IMG/VR virus record: IMGVR_UViG_3300009093_000034
Coordinates: 124,001 to 188,000 of that record
DNA length: 64,000 bases
Direction: 5' to 3' (one strand)
Shown: positions 2,615 through 32,881 of the stretch, in pieces
Layout of the letters: every line of letters starts with the position of its first letter
Numbering within the stretch: the stretch's first letter is position 1
Notes under the pieces: model-generated
Told to the model about the DNA's origin: nothing
Database searches by the model: none
The model's input: only the letters and a program-made list of their open reading frames with translations
Made by a program: the position numbers and the translations under genes

Positions 2615-2725
2615 ACCGTCAGCACTAACTGTGCAAAGTTCTTTCAGAATAGAAGTAAAATTAAAAATATATGTTCCGACCGTTGGTTGGAACTTCCGAA
2701 AATCTATTCTGTAAAGAGGTTCTTT

Positions 2726-3772
2726 ATGAACAAGCTTTTTACGATTCTTTCTGTGGTTCTCCTGGCTGCTTTTGCCAGTTGTACCATGCCTGGTTCGTCC
2801 ACCAAGACTTACCAGAAGATCCCTGTGATCGCCGGAGCTAAGGCCCCCACCCACACTTCTCGTAACATCTCTCTTGGAGATGGAGAAGCCGTAGCTCCTG
2901 AGCTGTTCTCGATCTCACCAGTAGTGACTGGTTGGGTTGGAAGCTCCACTCCCGTCACCGATGGTGAAGTCTTGACTTACACTTACTTTGGTGCTACGTT
3001 GAAGATGGTCGTTCACATGGACGTCCCGGTTGTAGGTGCCATCACCTATACTACTGACACTTTGGATGTCAGCGGAAATCCCACAGGTGTCTATGATACT
3101 ACTGTTGGGGCAGGCTTTGATGCTAACGCGTCCTTCTCCGAAGATGGTACCACCTACCCTGGTTCTGTAGGAGTAACCACGCTGAATAGCGTGTGGAATG
3201 CTTCTAACACCAGTCATGTGACTGCTGTTCTTAACGTGGGAGGAACTAGTTTCTCAATCGATCAGAAACTTTACATGAGTTTCTGGAACACGTCGACAAG
3301 TCCTGCTAAGCTGTATTGGGTGTACTACATCCACATGGTTATTCCTTCAGGAACCATCGATGGTAACGGCGGATTTACTGCGGCTGGTGCTGAATACGTT
3401 GATGAGAATGCTTACAACGTCAGCACTGAACCTGGAGTTTCTGGTCCGTTTGATTCTAGCTTGCTTTCCGCTCAGCTTTCCTACTCGAATAGTGTCTTCC
3501 TTATTAAGGCTACTCCTAATAAGGTTGGTGTACTCTTCAAGTACGGAACTCAGACTCCGGTTTCGCCTCCTACTTCCTCCATCATTACAGATGGTGTAGC
3601 TGGAGATCCTACGAGTGCTACCTTGGCATCTGCTGCTCCTACCTATACTCCTACAGATTCCTCTTGGGGATCTGGAACCTTGTACTACTACAGCACTCCG
3701 TATAAGTGGATCAAGGGTAGTTCGGATGGTCAGCCTGGTACCGATCAGGATAAGTTCAACGGTCTTCAGTAA
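2726..3772 (+). CDS. Ser/Thr-rich lipoprotein
   Basis: MNKLFTILSVVLLAAFASC signal peptide plus lipobox Cys; RBS AAGAGG. Confidence 0.75.
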   Translation: MNKLFTILSVVLLAAFASCTMPGSSTKTYQKIPVIAGAKAPTHTSRNISLGDGEAVAPELFSISPVVTGWVGSSTPVTDGEVLTYTYFGATLKMVVHMDVPVVGAITYTTDTLDVSGNPTGVYDTTVGAGFDANASFSEDGTTYPGSVGVTTLNSVWNASNTSHVTAVLNVGGTSFSIDQKLYMSFWNTSTSPAKLYWVYYIHMVIPSGTIDGNGGFTAAGAEYVDENAYNVSTEPGVSGPFDSSLLSAQLSYSNSVFLIKATPNKVGVLFKYGTQTPVSPPTSSIITDGVAGDPTSATLASAAPTYTPTDSSWGSGTLYYYSTPYKWIKGSSDGQPGTDQDKFNGLQ

Positions 3773-3791
3773 GACTCAAGTTTGATCTACG

Positions 3792-3821
3792 AAATCCGGC
3801 CTTCGGGCCGGATTTTTTTTT
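3792..3821 (+). terminator. Rho-independent terminator
   Basis: AAATCCGGCC-TTCG-GGCCGGATTT followed by T run. Confidence 0.9.
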
Positions 3822-3871
3822 GACAAAAAGTTTCTATTTGACTAATTACTTGAGATATTGATATTACACAA

Positions 3872-4022
3872 CAAATCGCGGTGGTTGTAACTCATACTTC
3901 GAACAAACTGTAAATTTGTCTATTGTAGGTGAGAATCCTACCGTCCCCACCAAACTTATTGTATACTACAGTCAGCTTGGTGGGGATGATGAAAAATCAG
4001 AGTTCCTAAATATTCCCGATTT
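3872..4022 (+). ncRNA. Circularly permuted tRNA-mimic RNA 1 (YrlA/Y-RNA-like) carrying a GUA anticodon-like arm
   Basis: T arm 3925-3941; acceptor 3942-3953 pairs with downstream 3977-3988; ends pair (AAATCG..GG / CC.CGATTT). Confidence 0.6.
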
Positions 4023-4027
4023 TATAC

Positions 4028-4101
4028 GCTACGTTAGCTCATGTAGGTAGAGCAGCTGATTTGTAACCAGCAGGCGAAGGGTGCAAGTCCTTTACGTAGC
4101 A
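4028..4101 (+). tRNA. tRNA-Thr(TGT)
   Basis: Cloverleaf, acceptor GCTACGT/ACGTAGC, loop TT-TGT-AA; no CCA. Confidence 0.85.
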
Positions 4102-4104
4102 TCA

Positions 4105-4460
4105 TTCTTTCTCTTTACCCGAAAGAGACTGGACCGAAAGGGTAGTTGGATAGCGGCGGTAGTTTTGAGGAGTTTCTTACTTCTCTGAAAGAACAATCCG
4201 TCCTTGAACAGCCTCCAACGAAGTAAGAAAGGGTCACGTTCGACTTATCCGGAGCGTGAATCTAAATGGTCTATGACCAGGGGATTAAAAGCACCGGAGG
4301 TTGGGAAGCAGCCAAGAATCAGTACTCGGTGGGCGGGAGTGGCCAAAACTGATTCATTCGTAGCGACGGGAAGATCGATTTCATCTTCTCCACCACAAGG
4401 CATCTTGATGAGATCTCTTGTGGGGGAAAATAAAGATCGAGACTCATTAGTTTCCTACAA
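4105..4460 (+). ncRNA. Large orphan structured RNA
   Basis: Helices 4173-4183/4220-4230, 4212-4216/4296-4300 (pseudoknot), 4316-4323/4348-4355, 4393-4399/4417-4423; no credible ORF. Confidence 0.55.
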
Positions 4461-4463
4461 CAT

Positions 4464-4548
4464 GGATAGGTACGTTAGCGGCTATACAGGCGGTCTTGAA
4501 AACCGTTCGCTCCGCAAGGAGCCGTGAGTTCGAGTCTCACCCTATCCG
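4464..4548 (+). tRNA. tRNA-Ser(TGA)
   Basis: GGATAGG/CCTATCC, loop CT-TGA-AA, long variable arm, G73. Confidence 0.9.
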
Positions 4549-4551
4549 GAA

Positions 4552-4890
4552 AAATCCAACCGATACAGGTCGATCGGAAATGGTGTACGTACCTAGTTTG
4601 CGCTAGGATCGCAATGCGGGACTTCAAACCTGTTTGAGTGGTGAATCATAACCCTCAAGTTGGAATTCATTTTCCTTCTTCGAAGATTCACGCCGAAAGG
4701 TAAAACCGCTCAATTTTTTGAAATAAGGACAATTCCTATGCTAACCCCTTAGATAAGGGAAGGCAGAAAGAATCGGTGAGGTGTTTTGATAGTACTCTTG
4801 GGACCACGGGTGTTCACTCAAAAGAGGCTAACAATGGGAAAAGAACAATTGTCATCTAACATCTACTAGATGAGTTCTTAGTACCAATGT
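4552..4890 (+). ncRNA. Large orphan structured RNA
   Basis: 4555-4560/4659-4664 crossing 4641-4647/4685-4691; 4841-4858/4867-4879; no ORF. Confidence 0.5.
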
Positions 4891-4896
4891 TTTAAC

Positions 4897-4979
4897 GGGT
4901 AGGTGTCTCGAGCGGCAAAGAGGGCGGACTGTAAATCCGTTGCGTTAACGCTTCGTGGGTTCGAGTCCCACCCTGCCCA
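4897..4979 (+). tRNA. tRNA-Tyr(GTA)
   Basis: Canonical type II cloverleaf, loop CT-GTA-AA. Confidence 0.9.
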
Positions 4980-5089
4980 TAAACACGGGCCGAAAGGCGG
5001 TCAAGCTCAAGCGTGTCTAAAAATCTTGAGTAGCAGGTTGGCTATGCTTCGTAAGGAACCAACTAGGGCAGACGCCGAAAAGGTCGAAC

Positions 5090-5176
5090 GGGAGTTGTCT
5101 CCGTCACCTGACTGTAAATCAGGCGTGACAAAACGGACGGAATAGATCACAAGTGGAGCATTACCACCAACTCTCA
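5090..5176 (+). ncRNA. D-armless tRNA-like RNA with GUA anticodon arm
   Basis: 8-bp acceptor GGGAGTTG/CAACTCTC, CCTGA-CTGTAAA-TCAGG arm, T-like arm GTGG-AGCATTA-CCAC. Confidence 0.55.
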
Positions 5177-5339
5177 TAAATCTTTTCTGTTAGCGCGCGT
5201 GTTGATGGAAGAGTCGCTTTTGATGTGTAGGCATAGGTTCACCCTCTGTGCCATGCAGAAAGAGAAATGAAATTCTGTTATTGGAGCCGAGATTTACCGG
5301 TGAGCTTTGGTAACGCTGGATGGAGTAACCAGCAAACAT

Positions 5340-5421
5340 GGTGGTCGTGGAGAAATGGTAGCCTCGCTAGATTGTGGATCTGGTGCTTAATCGCGTGCGG
5401 GTTCGAGCCCCGTCGACCACC
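5340..5421 (+). tRNA. tRNA-His(GTG), unusually long variable region
   Basis: G-1:C73, loop TT-GTG-GA, 13-nt variable region. Confidence 0.85.
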
Positions 5422-5458
5422 CTTTGATGGAATCACTAATTTGTAAGAGGTGATTGCT

Positions 5459-5749
5459 ATGACCAGTCAAGAAGGCCTTCAGGCTCAAGTAAACGACATC
5501 TTCGAAGAGATTCGACGAGAGGTTGATCCTGACGCAGCTTATGGAAATGAAGACGAAGCTATTGAAGAACTTTTCACAAAGTTTGATCTGAAGCTTTCTG
5601 AAGTCTTCAAGGGCTGGTCCAGATCTCCATCTGGAGATGTCGAACAAGCTCTTAATTGGGCTGTGAGAAACTCTGGAAGCGGAGTTTTTGTCTATGATCC
5701 AACTGACGAAGGATCTGGACAAGTCACAATTTTGAAGATCATCGAGTAA
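5459..5749 (+). CDS. Acidic hypothetical protein
   Basis: RBS AAGAGG, typical codon usage. Confidence 0.65.
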   Translation: MTSQEGLQAQVNDIFEEIRREVDPDAAYGNEDEAIEELFTKFDLKLSEVFKGWSRSPSGDVEQALNWAVRNSGSGVFVYDPTDEGSGQVTILKIIE

Positions 5750-5752
5750 GAA

Positions 5753-6028
5753 ATGTCTAGGTCTAAAGAGTTTAGACGAGAACGTGAAAAGGTCCAAAAG
5801 ACCAAGAGTAGGAAACTACTCAGGCGTTGGTGGAAAGTAGGAACTAAGATCGAAGAACCTTCGGACAGAGCAGTTGGTCATATGACCAGTACTCATCGAA
5901 GACCTTGTTCTTGTGAGATGTGTTGTAACCCACGACGTAGTGTTCTTTCTAGTGGTGAGTCAAAGCTTACCATTCAAGAAAGAAAAGACAAAGACGAGTC
6001 TCTTCATCAACTTAAAGAGGCTGCATAA
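5753..6028 (+). CDS. Basic hypothetical protein with CSCxxCCNPRR motif
   Basis: Cys motif seen in small phage proteins. Confidence 0.7.
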   Translation: MSRSKEFRREREKVQKTKSRKLLRRWWKVGTKIEEPSDRAVGHMTSTHRRPCSCEMCCNPRRSVLSSGESKLTIQERKDKDESLHQLKEAA

Positions 6029-6090
6029 AGGAGTGCTTGATGCACTTGATTAGAAATTGTGTCAATGACACCATTTAAGTTTTGAAAGAA

Positions 6091-6255
6091 AAAGAAAGCG
6101 TCGGTGGTTAGACTTACTTCGGATTATCAACCGCGTGGTGTGGGTTCGATTCCCATAGCTCTCCCTAAAACATCTTTGAGATAGGGTTTTTTAGGGAGAG
6201 CTTAGCTTAATGGATAGAGCACGTAACTTAGTTTGACCGATTATTACCTTTCTTT
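6091..6255 (+). ncRNA. Circularly permuted tRNA-mimic RNA 2 (YrlA/Y-RNA-like)
   Basis: T arm 6140-6156, then 14-bp acceptor 6157-6170/6189-6202 closed by a hairpin, then D arm 6203-6220; 5' and 3' ends pair in place of the anticodon arm. Confidence 0.75.
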
Positions 6256-6259
6256 ATAT

Positions 6260-6330
6260 AGACCCTTAGTGTAACGGAAACATGTGAAGCCTTGAACTTC
6301 ATGTCGCGGGTTCAACTCCTGCAGGGTCTA
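6260..6330 (+). tRNA. tRNA-Gln(TTG)
   Basis: TGAAG-CC-TTG-AA-CTTCA arm, T arm, acceptor AGACCCT/AGGGTCT. Confidence 0.85.
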
Positions 6331-6459
6331 ACCATTAGGTTATATGTCTGTACCGATCTAGGACGTTGCACGACTTCTTTCTTGGGATTAAGAGAAGCCG
6401 TGTCAGGCCTGGGGTAAAAAGCAGATTGGACGCTCAAGACCCAGCGAAGCGTTCATCAT

Positions 6460-6530
6460 AGGTCGTTCGTTCAATGGTAGGACTCTGGTCTCCAAAACCA
6501 AGAATGTGGGTTCAATTCCTACACGGCCTG
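6460..6530 (+). tRNA. tRNA-Trp(CCA)
   Basis: Loop CT-CCA-AA, AGGTCGT/ACGGCCT, G73. Confidence 0.9.
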
Positions 6531-16202: not shown

Positions 16203-16325
16203 GTTCTCTTGAACAGCGGAACGGCACCTGCAGAAGGCTGGTACGATGTCGGATAGTACCTAAGTGTTGCTGGACTGGCACGCGGCTCGCAAGCCGAGGA
16301 AGAGGTTCGAGTCCTCTAGGGAACA
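16203..16325 (+). ncRNA. tRNA-shelled RNA with expanded D arm
   Basis: Acceptor GTTCTCT/AGGGAAC, perfect T arm, ~60-nt branched D region. Confidence 0.6.
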
Positions 16326-16329
16326 TAGA

Positions 16330-16745
16330 AAAGAAACCGCTAGATAGTTCAGCGAGGAACTTTGCGTGTTCTTTTTTAACTGAGAAGAAGCACCACTCAA
16401 GTTGAGTTTGGGAGCAGGCCGACATAGCATCGGTGATGGTGCAGTTGAGAGGAAAGACCACCCAGAGTACCTCTCTACAGTTTTAGGAGAGAACAGTTTC
16501 AGAAACTGATACAATGTGAGAACATTGTGTGCAGGGAGTAAGGCACAGAAGACCCTTCAACAAGGCAGTGCTTGAGGCGAGTTGTTGCCGCCGGTCCAAT
16601 TCAGTTTGGATCCCTGCACAGAGTGCTCTCTGAGTACTTTTTATTGGTGGGTAATCTTCATTTCCTGGTTGACCCTAGGACGAAGATCAATCACCCCTCT
16701 GAAGTCGAAGGGTTAATACCCTGTCCTGAGCTGGTCAAAGCGAAG
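16330..16745 (+). ncRNA. Large orphan structured RNA
   Basis: 16447-52/16470-75, hairpins 16494-16508 and 16511-16528, 16529-37/16611-19. Confidence 0.55.
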
Positions 16746-20715: not shown

Positions 20716-20787
20716 AACAGGATAGTGTTTAACGGTAGCGCGGCGGCCTTCGGGACGAAAGTAGTGGTTCGAATCCACTTCCTGGGC
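20716..20787 (+). pseudogene. Degenerate tRNA-Pro(CGG)-like
   Basis: Intact T arm and D loop, 5-bp acceptor, broken anticodon stem around TT-CGG-GA. Confidence 0.5.
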
Positions 20788-20994
20788 AGAAAAGATAGTT
20801 CGGTTAACGGTGTTGGTCTTTACTACTGTCGGGATCCTCTCCCTTATGAGTGTAAAGAGCTGATCCGACCAGGCGAGCAGTGCGAGAAGGAAAAACAGGC
20901 GTTACAGAGATGGATGTGACGTCAATGCCTGATCATCGCGTCGCGTACTTGAGGGACAATAACCTGACAAAACCCTCAGGATCTACTTTTTCAC

Positions 20995-21375: not shown

Positions 21376-21486
21376 AAAGAGGAAGCAATTCCTGACTTCT
21401 ACGGAACGTCAGGTGGAAAACTCTTTGCTATACACCCAGCTAATAACTGGCACGCGGATGGTTCACTGAAGTTTCAGTCCGCACAT

Positions 21487-21558
21487 GCCTCTGTCGTCTA
21501 CAGGAAGGATCCCTGGTTTTCACCCAGGCGGACGTCGGTTCGAATCCGGCCAGAGGTA
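21487..21558 (+). tRNA. tRNA-Glu(TTC)
   Basis: CCTGG-TT-TTC-AC-CCAGG. Confidence 0.9.
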
Positions 21559-21631
21559 TAATTGGTCATTCGATCAAAACAAGGATCTTTTTGCTACCTT
21601 AGGACCGTTTGGTACGCAAAAGGAGAATTTT

Positions 21632-22273
21632 ATGATAGAGTATCCATCAATCATCAACAGCTCAAAAGCACCTCGTCAATCGATGATTGCGTTTGAGAAG
21701 TTGGACGGGAGTAACATCCGAGTCAAGTACACAGCTAAGAGAGGATTTGATCTCTTCGGAAGTCGAACTCAACTATTGGATGAAACTCATCCGATTCTTG
21801 GTGGTGTAGTCAAAGTCTTCAACGAGACCTGTAAGGAAGCGTTGGAAGAGTACTTCAGGAAGTACTACTCAAAGGAACGAGAGATCGAAGTCTTCGGAGA
21901 GTACGTCGGGCCTAACTCGTTTGCAGGCTTCCACTCGGATCCTGTTGACAAGATGAAGTTCGTGCTGTTTGACGTTATGATGATCCGTAAGGGTTATAAT
22001 GAGTTCTTGCTTCCGCAGGAGTTCATCAAGCTAGCGGAGCGTAACGCATCAGTTCCAGTCCCTAGAGTGATCTACGAAGGTAATCTTACCGACGATTTCA
22101 TCTCAAGAGTCCGTGCTGACGAGTTTGGAACATTCGAAGGTGTGGTCTGTAAGGGAAAGCAAGGACTCGGTTCTTTCCGAGGGAAAGTTTGGATGTGCAA
22201 GATCAAAACGAATGCATATCTAGAACTTCTCAAAGAAAAGAAAGGCGCAGACTGGGTTAAGTTTGCAGAGTAA
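21632..22273 (+). CDS. RNA ligase (Rnl2-like nucleotidyltransferase)
   Basis: Motif I EKLDGSNIR, FGE, FDV, EGVVCK, CKIK; RBS AAGGAG. Confidence 0.85.
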   Translation: MIEYPSIINSSKAPRQSMIAFEKLDGSNIRVKYTAKRGFDLFGSRTQLLDETHPILGGVVKVFNETCKEALEEYFRKYYSKEREIEVFGEYVGPNSFAGFHSDPVDKMKFVLFDVMMIRKGYNEFLLPQEFIKLAERNASVPVPRVIYEGNLTDDFISRVRADEFGTFEGVVCKGKQGLGSFRGKVWMCKIKTNAYLELLKEKKGADWVKFAE

Positions 22274-22677: not shown

Positions 22678-22748
22678 TCCTGCTCTTCAAGGGAAGGTTC
22701 ACCTTAAGTGCACTTAGGTGATGGCCGGTTCGATTCCGGAGGCGGGAG
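22678..22748 (+). pseudogene. Atypical tRNA-like element with extended anticodon stem (TGCA loop)
   Basis: TCCTGCT/GGCGGGA, T arm, CACCT..AGGTG enclosing 11 nt. Confidence 0.5.
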
Positions 22749-22753
22749 TCTTT

Positions 22754-28216: not shown

Positions 28217-28314
28217 AGGCGTCTTCTGGACTGATTGGAAACGGGTTCGATTCCCGTTGCGCCTAAAAACTTTCCCTCACTCGTACGAGATGAGGCGACC
28301 TCAATTTAAGGAGG
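28217..28314 (+). ncRNA. tRNA/Y-RNA-like element in the TROVE leader
   Basis: Perfect T arm 28241-28257; CGCCT can pair with 28218 or 28293 AGGCG; CCTC/GAGG hairpin covers the RBS. Confidence 0.45.
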
Positions 28315-28320
28315 TTGTCT

Positions 28321-29889
28321 ATGTCTAGAATGGCAAACAACCCCAAGGCTGCTACTGCAGCTAAGACCATGAGGAACATTCCTCAGGCAGATACTTTCAA
28401 CAAGGCAGGAGGACGAGCATATTCCAAGTCGGCTAAGGTCGAGCTTGCGGATCTCTTGTTCTCAAACTTCTTGTCCGGAGACACTTACCGAAAGGAAAGT
28501 GAAGTCTCCAAGAGGATCGAGGAGCTTGCTTCTCAGATCGAAGACAAGGAGTTCTTGGCCAAGGCCGCTCTTTACACTCGTAATGAGCTTGGCATGAGGA
28601 CCATGAGCCATCTGTTGGCAGGTGAGATCGCTTCCAAGAACTACGCTTCTGGCTCCGGCTGGGGACGTACCTTCTTCGATGCAATCGTCTACCGTGTCGA
28701 CGACATGGCTGAGATCCTTGGTTACTTCCTCGGAAAGGACCACAAAGCAATCCCTAACTCCCTAAAGTCTGGCTTCTCGTAAGCCTTCGATCGTTTCGAC
28801 GCCTACCAGTTGGCCAAGTATCGTGGTGACAGCAACGCTGTAAAGCTTGTTGACATTGTTCGACTTGTCCACCCGAAGGGAAACGAAAAGAACAAGACTG
28901 CTCTTGAGCAACTTGTTAAGGGAACCCTAAGAAACACCAAGACTTGGGAGGCTAAGGTCTCCGCAGCAGGTCAGAAGGCAACTTCCAAGGAAGCTGTCGC
29001 TGCTACCGCTGAGGCTTGGGAAGACCTTCTTAAGGAGAACAAGCTTGGTTACCTTGCTTTGATTCGTAACTTGACGAACATCGCCAACTCTGTTGATGAT
29101 GCTACGTTTGAGACGGCTCTGGCTCAGGTGATCGATGAGAAGTCTGTAAAGACCTCTCTAGTTCTTCCTTTCCAACTCTACATCGCTGCAAAGCAAGTAG
29201 AGAACGAGGGAAGGATCAAGAATCACAGCAGAATGTCAAAGGTGATCGACGCGCTGACCGCAGCCATCGACGTTTCTTTGTCCAACGTTCCTAAGCTCGA
29301 GGGCAAGACTCTCGTTGCAGTGGACATCTCTGGATCAATGGACTCTCGTCTATCAGCCATGGGTCAAGCTCGTGTTGTTGACGTAGCAACTCTCTTCGGT
29401 GTTGTCTTGGCTAAGGCTAACGATGCTGATTTGGTTCGCTTCAACACCAGTGCTTCCTACTCTGTTGTTCCTAAGTCTAGGTCTACTCTTGACTCTGTCA
29501 AGAGCTTGGCACAGACCGGTGGTGGTACTGCCTTCGAGTCCATCATGTACTTGATCAACCAGTCACAGACTGTCTACGATAGGATCTTGGTTCTATCTGA
29601 CATGCAGTCTTGGTCAGGAAAGACCGGAGGAGACTTCGCTCGCCTTGTCCAAGAGTACAGAAACAACAAGAAGCGTCCTAACATGACCTTCCTTTCGTGG
29701 GACCTCCACGGAGGAACCTCTCACCAGGTTCCTGAGTCTGATCCTCGTTCCATCGTCCTAGGAGGATGGAGTGACAAGATCTTCGACATCTTGGCAGAGA
29801 CCGAGACCGATCGAAACGCTCTAGTGAAGACCATCGAAGAGTACGAGATCAAGGTTCCTACCAAGGAACGAGCTCGTAAGACTGCGTAA
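28321..29889 (+). CDS. rsr: Ro60/TROVE-vWA RNA-binding protein interrupted by one in-frame TAA (28780-28782)
   Basis: NKAGGRAY, YTRNELGMRT, *AFDRFDAYQLAKYR continues in frame, LVHPK, TWE, ALIRNL, vWA VDISGSM and GGT..SDMQ. Confidence 0.88.
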
Positions 29890-30665: not shown

Positions 30666-31067
30666 ATGGAACCTTTTACTGACTCAGTAATCAAATATGT
30701 AGTGTATCACGGGTCTACTGATTCAATAAAAAAGTTTGATTCTACGTTCCCAGATCAAGCATTTCCTGCTCTTTATTTTTCTAGAACATTCGAAAAAGCT
30801 GAAGAATATACTCGTTCAGCTAAGAATCAATTAAAGTCTCATAAGACATTACCTCATTATGTCTATGCTTGTTTCATAGATATGAGAGAACCTCTTGAGC
30901 TTCCATCAAGACAAACGTATTTTATTGATCAAAAAAGAGTAGACCTTATTACAAGTCTTGGATTTGATGGGCTTATTGGGAAAGATGAAAAAAATGAAAT
31001 TGAAGAATTTGTTTTGTTCGATCCCTCAAAAGTAAAAATTCTAAATAGAACATTAATAAAAGGTTAA
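30666..31067 (+). CDS. ADP-ribosyltransferase-fold protein (PolyVal-ART-like)
   Basis: VYHGS..F..ALYFS..AEEY..GFDGLI..EFVLFDPSKVKI; AT-rich codons. Confidence 0.6.
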   Translation: MEPFTDSVIKYVVYHGSTDSIKKFDSTFPDQAFPALYFSRTFEKAEEYTRSAKNQLKSHKTLPHYVYACFIDMREPLELPSRQTYFIDQKRVDLITSLGFDGLIGKDEKNEIEEFVLFDPSKVKILNRTLIKG

Positions 31068-31936: not shown

Positions 31937-32881
31937 ATGCGTAAAGACGTCCTCTTGTCTCGCGACGCCTTCCGCAAGGCTGTCTTTGATCGAGACCACA
32001 ACACATGCGTATTCTGTTCTCTTCCTGCAGTAGATGCTCACCACATCATGGAGCGAAAGCTCTGGCCTGATGGTGGCTACTATTTGAACAATGGTGCCTC
32101 CGTCTGCGAACAGCATCACTGGGATTGTGAGAACTCCATCATCTCTGTTGAACAAGTCAGAAAGGCTTGTAACATCATCGACATCATTCTTCCTCCTTAC
32201 TTTTCTGAGAATCAAATCTACGATAAGTGGGGAAATCAGAAGCTCACGACTGAAGAAGCCGGAGCTATCAAGTACCCTAGAACTTATCACTTCCCTTGGT
32301 CCCAAAATCTCATCAACGACGATCGAATGTTGGAGTCTACTTCTCAGTTCGAACTCAACCACGTGATCGCTACGGTCAAGATGGATGGTGAAAACACGAC
32401 CATGACTAGAGATGCTTGTCACGCAAGGTCTCTTGATAGTGGAGCTCATCCTTCTAGAACTTGGGTCAGATCTTTTTGGGGTTCTCTCAAACACAACATT
32501 CCAGAAGGTTGGAGAGTTTGTGGAGAAAATCTTTACGCAAAACACTCAATCCTTTATACTGATCTCACCAGCTATTTCCAAGGCTTATCAATCTGGAATG
32601 ACAAGAACATTTGTCTGTCCTGGAAAGAGACCAAAGAATGGTTTGAACTTCTTGGCATTCAACCTGTCCAAGAGATCTACGATGGCATGTACTACGAAAA
32701 AGGCATCAAGGATCTTTGGGACCCAACAAAAGGTTGGGAAGGCTACGTAGTTCGGTTCGCAGAGGAATTTCCTATGAGAGATTTCAATCTCAAGGTAGGA
32801 AAGTTTGTTAGAAAAGGCCATGTTCAAACTGATGAACATTGGATGCAACAAGCTCTGACACCTAATAAACTCCAGGCCTAA
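31937..32881 (+). CDS. HNH endonuclease-RNA ligase fusion
   Basis: N-term CVFC..DAHHI..LCxxHH; C-term KYPRTYHFPWS, VKMDGENTT, CGENLY, EGYVVR, KFVR. Confidence 0.85.
   Translation: MRKDVLLSRDAFRKAVFDRDHNTCVFCSLPAVDAHHIMERKLWPDGGYYLNNGASVCEQHHWDCENSIISVEQVRKACNIIDIILPPYFSENQIYDKWGNQKLTTEEAGAIKYPRTYHFPWSQNLINDDRMLESTSQFELNHVIATVKMDGENTTMTRDACHARSLDSGAHPSRTWVRSFWGSLKHNIPEGWRVCGENLYAKHSILYTDLTSYFQGLSIWNDKNICLSWKETKEWFELLGIQPVQEIYDGMYYEKGIKDLWDPTKGWEGYVVRFAEEFPMRDFNLKVGKFVRKGHVQTDEHWMQQALTPNKLQA

What the first reader, a model, noticed from the sequence alone, without database searches (positions are those of the whole stretch)
3872..4022. Second permuted Y-like RNA that retains a Tyr(GUA) anticodon arm
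It shares the 5' signature of 6091-6255 (CGGTGGTT...TACTTCG) and a similar 3' ATT(A/C)CC, has a T arm followed by an acceptor pairing downstream (3942-3953/3977-3988), but keeps ACAAA-CTGTAAA-TTTGT and has only a vestigial D arm. Both promoter-like motifs sit immediately upstream (3841, 3850), which fits a 5' end near 3870. It could be a Y RNA presenting an anticodon as bait for nucleases.
Basis: partly seen in the sequence, partly recalled or inferred. Interest (0 to 1): 0.75.

Follow-up and report, generated by a model that had tools for sequence, protein, structure and literature searches.

The report
Phage Y-like RNA mimicking tRNA-Tyr
A 306-kb soil phage encodes a conserved ~150-nt structured RNA that joins a Ro60-type bulged stem to a rearranged tRNA-Tyr body with an intact anticodon arm, so it looks like a new variant of the Y RNAs that partner the Ro60/Rsr RNA-quality-control protein.

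Summary
Window 3873-4022 (+) folds into a terminal stem closing a junction of three hairpins: an anticodon arm with loop CUGUAAA (Tyr, GUA), a T arm, and a long closed acceptor-like hairpin that abuts the T arm. No D arm is supported.

I found orthologs in three related jumbo phages. One is a Logan contig from a mine metagenome; the others are L185:1874-2028 and L186:6802-6959. Every helix shows compensatory changes, and the anticodon loop is invariant.

The shared "5' signature" is one strand of a cassette. It consists of a 6-bp helix, one bulged C, two more pairs and an asymmetric loop. At least 13 RNAs in this phage group carry it, with covariation. This is the published layout of the vertebrate Ro60 binding site.

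All these phages encode Rsr/Ro60. In three relatives a cassette RNA lies immediately 3' of rsr.

Best reading: a Y RNA paralog whose effector module mimics tRNA-Tyr. Binding to Rsr is inferred, not shown. The "bait for anticodon nucleases" idea remains untested. I rate it a new variant of a known kind.

The parts
3791..3816 (+). Intrinsic terminator of the upstream gene (2687-3772). It marks the end of the preceding transcription unit.
   Evidence: 11-bp stem with 6 G-C pairs, followed by a T run.
3838..3865 (+). Sigma-70-like promoter: TTGACT, 16-nt spacer, GATATT. The predicted start is about 3872-3873.
   Evidence: the only such site in 3600-6500; homology with the mine-metagenome relative begins exactly at 3866.
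3873..4022 (+). The whole RNA ('RNA1'), a Y-like RNA with a tRNA-Tyr-derived module.
   Evidence: model R1 matches end to end here and in L185 and L186; covariation counts.
3873..3881 (+). 5' strand of the lower terminal stem P1a. AAAUCG pairs with 4017-4022, C3879 is bulged, and GG 3880-3881 pairs with CC 4015-4016.
   Evidence: 8 pairs, 100% paired, 3 with changes on both sides; the same bulged-C helix appears in at least 13 family members.
3882..3888 (+). 5' side of the internal loop (UGGUUGU). The UG(G/A) start is conserved across the family. It is a candidate protein-contact surface.
   Evidence: sequence table; 3866-3901 is invariant in the relative.
3889..3893 (+). 5' strand of the upper terminal stem P1b (AACUC). 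It pairs with GAGUU at 4000-4004.
   Evidence: 3 of 5 pairs change on both sides; orthologs carry ACACU/AGUGU and GGG/CCC.
3894..3902 (+). Junction strand AUACUUCGA. The core UACUUC is conserved in all orthologs and in most of the paralogs.
3903..3919 (+). Anticodon arm: a 5-bp stem and the 7-nt loop CUGUAAA (3908-3914). The anticodon GUA (Tyr) is at 3910-3912.
   Evidence: the loop is identical in all four orthologs; 4 of the 5 stem pairs vary, 3 of them on both sides.
3925..3941 (+). T arm: GUAGG, loop UGAGAAU, CCUAC. Loop positions 1 (U) and 5 (A), the pair that defines the T-loop fold, are kept. The usual UUC is missing.
   Evidence: in the relative 3927/3939 changes A-U to U-A and 3926/3940 changes U-A to U-G.
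3942..3988 (+). Closed acceptor-like hairpin directly abutting the T arm: 12 bp (3942-3953 with 3977-3988) plus a distal stem. The core CCCCAC/GUGGGG is invariant.
   Evidence: 3952/3978 and 3953/3977 are compensatory; 2 pairs change on both sides.
3989..3999 (+). A-rich junction strand (AUGAAAAAUCA) between the acceptor hairpin and P1b.
   Evidence: AUGA is kept in the orthologs.
4000..4022 (+). 3' strand of the terminal stem: GAGUU (P1b), loop CCUAAAUAUU, CC and CGAUUU (P1a).
4028..4101 (+). tRNA-Thr(UGU), 5 nt downstream of the RNA. RNase P cleavage here would set the maximal 3' end of RNA1 (inference).
6093..6253 (+). Paralog 'RNA2'. It has the same cassette (AAAG[C]GU with AC-CUUU), then a T arm, a closed acceptor and a D arm, which is the YrlA order.
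   Evidence: YrlA 21.7 bits. R1 32.7 bits, E = 1e-6; ortholog in L172.
28321..29889 (+). rsr (Ro60/TROVE + vWA) gene, the presumed protein partner. It is interrupted by an in-frame TAA at 28780-28782 in this assembly.
   Evidence: the near-identical variant P0025 is intact (522 aa) with Ser at that codon.

Best explanation
Window 3873-4022 encodes a non-coding RNA of about 150 nt. It belongs to a family of Ro60/Rsr-associated Y-like RNAs found in a group of soil jumbo phages.

[quoted passage not shown] An asymmetric internal loop follows, then a short upper stem. I infer that this module is the docking site for the phage's Rsr ring.

The stem closes a four-way junction that carries a rearranged tRNA-Tyr body. 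That body has a complete anticodon arm with the canonical loop CUGUAAA, a T arm, and an acceptor-like helix stacked on the T arm but closed by a long hairpin. Because the acceptor is closed, the RNA cannot be aminoacylated. The terminal stem occupies the place of the D arm.

I infer that the RNA is transcribed from its own promoter at the head of a tRNA cluster, and that its 3' end is set by processing of the adjacent tRNA-Thr.

Proposed mechanism (inferred): as with YrlA and other Y RNAs, the lower stem holds Rsr while the tRNA-like module brings in, or occupies, a factor that reads the tRNA-Tyr anticodon loop. That factor could be a host anticodon nuclease, a modification enzyme or a repair enzyme. 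This would be part of the phage's tRNA protection and repair programme, which also includes 50 tRNAs and three Rnl2-type RNA ligases.

Shown: the structure, its conservation, the family, and the genomic link to rsr. Inferred: Rsr binding, expression and ends, and the identity of the anticodon-loop partner.
For: Structure and conservation:
- Orthologs exist in a mine-metagenome relative, in L185:1874-2028 and in L186:6802-6959. Model R1 scores 174, 173 and 91 bits.
- On the three-sequence alignment, 95.2% of cells are paired. 11 of 35 pairs change on both sides, and 0 of 500 shuffles reach that. Slid controls give at most 3.
- The T stem adds a compensatory A-U to U-A change in the fourth sequence.
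- The anticodon loop is identical in all four orthologs, although 4 of the 5 stem pairs vary.

The cassette:
- The same helix with a bulged C occurs in at least 13 RNAs. The two pairs after the bulge covary: GG/CC, AG/CU and GU/AC.
- R1 also detects paralogs RNA2 (32.7 bits) and RNA3 (26.5 bits) end to end.

Link to Rsr:
- The window phage encodes Rsr.
- Relatives L183, L185 and G001 each have a cassette RNA directly 3' of rsr on the same strand.
- G001 was found through the RNA pattern alone, and its 35-kb fragment still encodes an intact TROVE protein.
- The L186 ortholog of RNA1 lies 3.0 kb upstream of rsr.

Other support:
- Paralog RNA2 has YrlA architecture and a weak RF02553 match.
- Paralog RNA3 carries GUCGAAAG, which fits the published Rsr motif GNCGAAN0-1G.
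- Context: RNA ligases at 21485-22273 and 31937-32881.
Against: - No experiment and no usable transcript data.
- In this phage the RNA lies 24.3 kb from rsr, not within the 4 kb used to define YrlA.
- The window's rsr carries an in-frame TAA.
- RNA1 gives no RF02553 match.
- The CGAA at 3900-3903 is not conserved: it is CGUG, CGAG and CAAA in the orthologs.
- Some cassettes enclose what look like ordinary tRNAs (tRNA-Gly UCC in L186). A leader-trailer processing stem would also explain that.
- Most relatives were found through Rsr, so co-occurrence is partly by construction.
- The covariation alignment was fitted to the model.
Confidence: 0.6

Rival explanations
1. The bulged-C stem is a processing or maturation cassette for tRNA-type genes and has nothing to do with Rsr. 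It would be a site for host RNase III or a phage endonuclease or ligase. RNA1 would then be a tRNA-Tyr derivative released by that processing and acting on its own, for example as a free decoy or competitor for an enzyme that binds the tRNA-Tyr anticodon loop.
For: - Some cassettes enclose near-canonical tRNAs. L186:6359-6495 encloses an ARAGORN tRNA-Gly(UCC). Genome 115249-115382 encloses a tRNA-like body with a 7-bp acceptor and ACCA.
- The cassettes sit inside tRNA clusters.
- The phage has three RNA ligases.
- Individual cassettes are gained and lost as modules between relatives (joints).
Against: - Invariant sequence features point to a sequence-specific partner rather than a generic double-strand nuclease: a single C bulge, UG after the two pairs, and (U)AUU opposite.
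- Cassette RNAs without any tRNA-like body lie directly 3' of rsr in three phages.
- The layout matches the Ro60 site described in PMC4726728.
Confidence: 0.2
2. It is a cis-acting leader of the tRNA operon. A structured 5' element between the promoter and tRNA-Thr would control transcription or processing of the downstream cluster, possibly by switching between two pairings of CCCCACC. One partner is GGUGG at 3880-3884 and the other is GGUGGGG at 3979-3985.
For: - Its position immediately after the only promoter and 5 nt before tRNA-Thr.
- The two alternative partners for 3944-3950 are visible in the sequence.
- The Rfam tRNA model aligns the 'linear' pairing at 28 bits.
Against: - The linear pairing has 2 mismatches in 7 pairs, against 12 perfect pairs for the hairpin.
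- Covariation supports the hairpin.
- Orthologs are not always followed by a tRNA. In L186 the next feature is a protein gene.
- Paralogs with the same cassette occur in the middle of clusters.
Confidence: 0.07
3. It is a circularly permuted or split tRNA-Tyr gene. Its transcript would be cut in the acceptor loop, and perhaps ligated at the terminal stem, to give a chargeable tRNA-Tyr.
For: - In the window the 3' acceptor strand reads CGUCCCC-A-CCA, which is seven bases, a discriminator A and CCA.
- From memory, GGUGGGG/CCCCACC resembles a bacterial tRNA-Tyr acceptor stem.
- RNA ligases are encoded.
Against: - CCA is not conserved. The orthologs read CCC, CUG and CCC at that place.
- There is no D arm.
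- The connectors are 9 and 11 nt, where tRNA has 1 and 2.
- The T loop lacks the UUC needed for the elbow.
- The phage already has a normal tRNA-Tyr at 4897-4979.
- No RtcB is encoded.
- No bacterial pathway for permuted tRNAs is known (my own knowledge).
Confidence: 0.05
4. It is a decaying tRNA-Tyr pseudogene followed by a chance hairpin, with no function.
For: - The tRNA model falls just under threshold (28.0 against 29 bits).
- The T loop is aberrant and the D arm is missing.
Against: - It is conserved across four phages whose Rsr proteins are only 50-56% identical.
- Compensatory changes occur in every helix, and the loop and junction motifs are invariant.
Confidence: 0.03

Closest known systems
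YrlA (Rfam RF02553), the tRNA-mimicking bacterial and phage Y RNA (Chen et al. 2014, PMC4201824)
   Same: - A terminal stem formed by the 5' and 3' ends.
- A T arm followed directly by an acceptor-like helix closed by a loop, so the order is permuted relative to tRNA.
- Encoded by genomes that carry rsr, including phages.
- The paralog at 6093-6253 has the full YrlA order (T, acceptor, D).
   Different: - RNA1 has no D arm and keeps a complete anticodon arm.
- The terminal stem enters the junction at the D-arm position, not in place of the anticodon arm.
- There is no RF02553 match and no conserved GNCGAAN0-1G motif.
- It lies 24 kb from rsr in this phage.
- The T loop is non-canonical.
Vertebrate Y RNA lower stem, the Ro60 binding site (PMC4726728)
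   Same: - A helix of 6-7 bp, one bulged cytidine on the 5' strand, a few more pairs, then extra bases on the opposite strand and an upper stem.
- Conserved sequence in the stems and a variable interior.
   Different: - The sequences differ: (N)6-C-GG-UG here, against GGUCCGA-type there (the latter from the literature).
- Binding to Rsr is not shown.
- The interior is a tRNA-derived junction, not a loose loop.
Deinococcus radiodurans Yrn1 (as described in PMC4201824)
   Same: A Y RNA whose tRNA-like part can be drawn with an 'anticodon arm' that has a 5-bp stem.
   Different: The Yrn1 loop has 6 nt and no recognisable anticodon identity. RNA1 has the exact 7-nt tRNA-Tyr loop, and it is invariant among orthologs. 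The order of the arms also differs.
Thermus phage phiLo Yrl1/Yrl2 with phage Ro60 (PMC12135203)
   Same: - Phage-encoded Ro60 plus phage-encoded Y-like RNAs with a stem, internal loop and stem layout.
- The window's Rsr is closest by sequence to phiLo Ro60 among solved structures (9KOP).
   Different: The phiLo RNAs lie just upstream of the gene, carry a CGAA motif, and are not described as tRNA-like.
Phage tRNAs that counter tRNA-targeting defences, such as T5 tRNA-Tyr against retron Eco7 PtuAB (PMC11555353)
   Same: A phage-encoded RNA that displays a tRNA-Tyr anticodon loop, in a genome rich in tRNAs and RNA-repair genes.
   Different: Those are functional, chargeable tRNAs that replace the cleaved host tRNA. 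RNA1 cannot be charged and would have to act as a decoy or an adaptor.

Membership tests
YrlA (RF02553) | Match to the Rfam covariance model at or above the gathering score (69 bits). | tested here: not met
   no YrlA match with E up to 10 on 3860-4027. Paralog RNA2 reaches only 21.7 bits.
YrlA (RF02553) | Encoded within about 4 kb of rsr on the same strand (the criterion of Chen et al. 2014). | tested here: not met
   The RNA is on the same strand but 24.3 kb upstream of rsr (28321) in the window. The L186 ortholog is 3.0 kb upstream of rsr and the L185 ortholog is 8 kb upstream.
YrlA (RF02553) | GNCGAAN0-1G motif near the 5' end. | tested here: not met
   The window has UUCGAAC at 3898-3904. 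The flanking G residues are absent, and the CGAA changes in all three orthologs. Paralog RNA3 does carry GUCGAAAG.
YrlA (RF02553) | A tRNA-like domain with a T arm, a closed acceptor-like stem and a D arm. | tested here: inconclusive
   The T arm and closed acceptor are present and covary. The D arm is absent, and the candidate GAA/UUC is broken by C4005G in the relative.
Y RNA in the broad sense (Ro60 partner) | 5' and 3' ends pair into a lower stem with a single bulged C, followed by an internal loop and an upper stem. | tested here: met
   P1a is 3873-3881 with 4015-4022, and C3879 is bulged. It is conserved with covariation in orthologs and in at least 13 paralogs. The definition comes from PMC4726728.
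Y RNA in the broad sense (Ro60 partner) | The genome encodes a Ro60/Rsr protein. | tested here: met
   TROVE matches of 41.8 and 36.8 bits and PDB matches to Ro60 proteins. The gene has an in-frame TAA here, but a near-identical variant is intact.
Y RNA in the broad sense (Ro60 partner) | Physical binding to Ro60/Rsr. | not testable with these tools
   The complex prediction was not folded for a protein-RNA job. It counts neither for nor against.
tRNA (RF00005) | A cloverleaf scoring at or above the gathering score, with an open acceptor end and a D arm. | tested here: not met
   28.0 bits against 29. ARAGORN makes no call. The 'linear' acceptor has 2 mismatches in 7 pairs, there is no D arm, and the true partner of 3942-3953 is 3977-3988.
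Permuted tRNA genes or two-piece (permuted) tmRNA | A conserved CCA or processing site at the acceptor. For tmRNA, also a G3-U70 pair and a tag reading frame. | tested here: not met
   CCA is present only in the window and not in the orthologs. The acceptor has G3-C70. ARAGORN finds no tmRNA here. RF04321 scores only 15.5 bits.

The most novel reading that the evidence does not exclude
These jumbo phages carry a whole set of Ro60-docking RNAs. Their interchangeable tRNA-derived modules each display a specific anticodon loop: Tyr GUA in RNA1, and Gly UCC, Gln UUG and Phe-like GAA in paralogs. Some modules are still complete tRNAs. Rsr would use them as anticodon-specific adaptors or decoys. They would either soak up host anticodon nucleases or deliver Rsr, together with nucleases or ligases, to particular damaged tRNAs. 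That would amount to a programmable tRNA-surveillance and counter-defence system, and a living intermediate in the evolution of Y RNAs from tRNAs.
Probability: 0.25. Interest if true: 0.85.

Novelty: new variant of a known kind. Interest (0 to 1): 0.7.

Why it matters
The role of the tRNA-like half of bacterial Y RNAs is still unknown. This RNA keeps an exact tRNA-Tyr anticodon loop that stays invariant while its stem covaries. That points to a partner reading the anticodon loop, which gives a concrete and testable handle on what Y-RNA tRNA mimicry is for.

The family also shows the same Ro60-type stem attached to tRNA bodies at three different entry points: the D-arm position, the anticodon-arm position and the acceptor side. 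Some members enclose intact tRNAs. Together they read like an evolutionary series from tRNA to Y RNA.

tRNA-Tyr is a known target of anti-phage nucleases (PMC11555353). A non-chargeable Tyr mimic tied to Rsr would therefore be a new kind of counter-defence.

Tried and rejected
- IMG/VR scans for the 5' signature gave only unrelated coding hits.
- A scan for the RNA2 core gave nothing.
- The metagenome scan for the exact 22-mer returned only the source contig and a 99.99% identical one.
- The protein upstream of the RNA has no relatives in IMG/VR.
- Relatives of the 58-aa protein next to RNA3 are cellular genes, Spirochaeta-like, and did not lead to RNA3 orthologs.
- The complex prediction of Rsr halves with RNA1 was counted but not folded, so it is no evidence either way.
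- The RtcB family is absent from the genome.
- The TAA in rsr is not evidence of a changed code. Pairs of long same-frame ORFs separated by a single stop occur with all three stop codons, and a variant has TCA at that site. No alternative code was assumed.
- A loose descriptor for the cassette gives many chance hits in 306 kb. Only hits that also carry the junction motif were counted.
- A unique palindrome upstream of RNA2 has no other copy in the genome.
- The claim that GGUGGGG/CCCCACC equals a bacterial tRNA-Tyr acceptor stem rests on memory and was not checked.

Full report
**Setting.** The window is bases 124001-188000 of a 305,833-bp phage record with terminal repeats, from a rhizosphere metagenome. 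The genome carries 50 tRNA genes and three Rnl2-type RNA ligases. It also has a Ro60/Rsr gene at window 28321-29889. The finding lies at the head of one tRNA cluster. The order is terminator 3791-3816, the only sigma-70-like promoter in 3600-6500 (3838-3865), the element, and then tRNA-Thr from 4028.

- The motif CGGTGGTT...TACTTCG occurs at 3879-3901 and 6102-6121. A one-mismatch copy lies at genome 118243.
- The arm ACAAA-CTGTAAA-TTTGT is at 3903-3919 and the T hairpin at 3925-3941.
- There are 12 uninterrupted pairs between 3942-3953 and 3977-3988 (-45.1 kcal/mol, z = -3.99).
- The Rfam tRNA model scores 28.0 bits, one bit under threshold, by forcing a poor 'linear' acceptor with 2 mismatches in 7. 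ARAGORN makes no call.
- A genome-wide scan for a T hairpin directly abutted by a hairpin of at least 9 bp gave this locus (12 bp) and 6140 (14 bp) as the strongest hits. Six weaker hits also appeared.

**Orthologs and covariation.** Logan contigs of a mine metagenome contain a relative with about 40 differences over 3866-4334. Its homology starts exactly at 3866, and 3866-3901 is identical. Its differences include:
- A-U to U-A at 3927/3939 in the T stem;
- A-U to C-G at 3952/3978 and A-U to G-C at 3953/3977 in the acceptor hairpin;
- A-U to G-U at 3903/3919;
- one broken pair, 3951/3979.

Searching with Rsr gave related jumbo-phage contigs whose Rsr proteins are 50-56% identical. L185:1874-2028 is a clear ortholog. 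A covariance model built from the two sequences then found L186:6802-6959 at 91.4 bits.

On the three aligned orthologs, 95.2% of cells pair and 11 of 35 pairs change on both sides. That splits as lower stem 3, upper stem 3, anticodon stem 3 and acceptor 2. No shuffle out of 500 reaches this, and slid controls give at most 3. One caveat is that this alignment was fitted to the model. The two-sequence MAFFT alignment already shows 4 double changes.

The loop CUGUAAA is identical in all four sequences, while four of the five stem pairs vary. L185 and L186 also carry a small variable-arm hairpin (GCC-UUCG-GGC and GCC-GAAA-GGC), which fits descent from a long-arm tRNA-Tyr. The window lineage has lost that hairpin.

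**Anatomy.**
- P1a: 3873-3878 pairs with 4017-4022, C3879 is bulged, and 3880-3881 pairs with 4015-4016.
- Internal loop: 3882-3888 opposite 4005-4014.
- P1b: 3889-3893 pairs with 4000-4004.
- Junction strand AUACUUCGA: 3894-3902.
- Anticodon arm: 3903-3919.
- T arm: 3925-3941.
- Closed acceptor-like hairpin: 3942-3988.
- A-rich strand: 3989-3999.

Going round the junction, the order is P1, anticodon arm, T arm, acceptor. This is a tRNA cloverleaf with the terminal stem in the D-arm position and the acceptor closed. The T loop (UGAGAAU, or UGCAAAU in relatives) keeps U at position 1 and A at position 5. It lacks the UUC that would contact a D loop, which fits the absence of a D arm.

**The '5' signature' is a cassette.** Aligning the ends of all related RNAs shows a common module. 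On the 5' strand it is six pairing bases, C, two pairing bases and UG(A/G). On the 3' strand it is (U)AUU, two pairing bases and six pairing bases. The six-pair helix differs freely between members but always pairs. The two pairs after the bulge covary as GG/CC, AG/CU and GU/AC. Minimum-energy folds recover the bulged helix independently in each of the seven members folded that way.

Members in this genome are:
- RNA1;
- RNA2 at window 6093-6253, which has the YrlA order T, acceptor, D (21.7 bits to RF02553; ortholog in L172);
- RNA3 at genome 118237-118364, with the order D, anticodon arm, T, short hairpin (40.5 bits local to the tRNA model);
- genome 115249-115382.

L186 alone has at least six members within 2 kb. 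One of them encloses an ordinary-looking tRNA-Gly(UCC). Model R1 detects RNA2 and RNA3 over its full length at E of about 1e-6 and 7e-5.

[quoted passage not shown] Removing either bulge abolishes binding (PMC4726728). The cassette has this layout.

In L183 and L185, an RNA starting with the cassette (GGUG[C]GG-UGGU... and GGCG[C]GG-UGGU...) lies directly after the rsr terminator on the same strand. Its interior is not tRNA-like.

A scan of IMG/VR with a cassette-only pattern gave seven hits, of which one is a true member. It lies in a 35-kb fragment. That fragment encodes an intact 531-aa TROVE protein, and it too has a cassette RNA directly 3' of rsr.

RNA3 carries GUCGAAAG, which fits the Rsr-associated motif GNCGAAN0-1G of Chen et al..

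The window's own rsr has an in-frame TAA at 28780-28782. A near-identical variant in another assembly has Ser there and is full length. I therefore treat this as an allele or an error, not a lineage-wide loss and not a code change.

**Interpretation.** The best-supported reading is a Y RNA paralog. The bulged lower stem would dock Rsr, and the tRNA-Tyr-like module would engage something that reads the anticodon loop.

What that partner is cannot be decided here. The exact loop CUGUAAA contains the U-G-U that several Tyr- or GUN-directed enzymes and nucleases recognise (established knowledge, not tested here). tRNA-Tyr is a documented target of anti-phage nucleases (PMC11555353). The window holds two further Tyr-loop hairpins within 1.3 kb: the real tRNA-Tyr, and a tRNA-like element at 5090-5175.

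The main rival is that the cassette is a processing stem for tRNA-type genes, because some cassettes enclose real tRNAs. The pseudogene, permuted-tRNA and operon-leader readings fit the conservation pattern poorly.

**Novelty.** Phage Ro60 genes and Y-like RNAs are known (PMC4201824, PMC12135203, PMC7824862), and so is tRNA mimicry by YrlA. In the literature I searched I did not find three things:
- a Y-like RNA with a complete, sequence-invariant anticodon arm and the terminal stem at the D-arm position;
- one Ro60-type cassette attached to tRNA bodies at different entry points within one genome;
- a vertebrate-like bulged-C lower stem in phage Y RNAs.

I therefore rate it a new variant of a known kind.

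Noticed in passing
window 28780-28782 (within rsr, 28321-29889): In-frame TAA in the middle of the TROVE domain of the phage Ro60/Rsr gene. A near-identical variant protein from another assembly (P0025, 522 aa) has Ser there (I infer a TCA codon), and more distant homologs have Glu. This could be a nonsense allele, an assembly error or read-through; it was not resolved.
   Followed up: partly
window 28217-28264: A tRNA-like element without a D arm, directly upstream of rsr on the same strand. It has a 6-bp acceptor, a short arm and a canonical T arm ACGGG-UUCGAUU-CCCGU. It lacks the cassette. Its weak best Rfam match is mascRNA (14.9 bits).
   Followed up: partly
window 5090-5175: A third Tyr anticodon-loop hairpin (CCUGA-CUGUAAA-UCAGG, 5107-5123) inside a tRNA-like fold with an 8-bp acceptor and a non-canonical T hairpin. 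Neither ARAGORN nor Rfam calls it. The block 5087-5334 is missing at this place in a relative but present elsewhere in that metagenome.
   Followed up: partly
window 6093-6253: The paralog 'RNA2' has YrlA architecture and the same bulged-C cassette. It is preceded by a unique palindrome, GTGTCAATGACAC (6059-6071). The surrounding 40 nt are almost identical in the relative L172, although the flanks are only 73% identical.
   Followed up: partly
genome 115249-115382 and 118237-118364 (upstream of the window); L186:4945-6959: Further cassette RNAs. One in this genome encloses a tRNA-like body with a 6-nt anticodon loop and an encoded ACCA. In relative L186 at least six cassettes lie in tandem; one encloses an ARAGORN tRNA-Gly(UCC), and others display Gln(UUG)-like loops.
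   Followed up: partly
window 4102-4462, 4550-4896 and 4980-5340: Spacers of about 350 nt between tRNA genes. They are rich in GAAA-capped hairpins and have no convincing ORFs. They differ between relatives as whole modules, and the relative L172 has a gene of 167 aa inserted in this region whose product looked HNH-endonuclease-like by eye (no domain hit on record).
   Followed up: no
window 35775-35849: tRNA with anticodon CUA (an amber-suppressor type; ARAGORN labels it Pyl), scoring 68.6 bits on the tRNA model. I did not examine whether TAG is read through anywhere in this phage.
   Followed up: no
window 16260-16375, 20720-20790 and 22690-22750: Canonical T loops (GGTTCGA.TCC) outside any called tRNA, in tRNA-like contexts with odd anticodon regions. 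One has a UUCG tetraloop and one an 8-nt loop. They do not carry the cassette.
   Followed up: no
window 21485-22273, 30666-31067 and 31937-32881: Two Rnl2-family RNA ligases and an ART-PolyVal ADP-ribosyltransferase flank rsr, interleaved with tRNAs. A third ligase lies at genome 222952. No RtcB is present.
   Followed up: partly
L004:2905-3081 (genome 118384-118560): A 58-aa basic protein next to RNA3. Its close homologs (67-81% identical) are chromosomal bacterial genes, and the named ones come from Spirochaeta. This may be a hint about the host lineage.
   Followed up: partly
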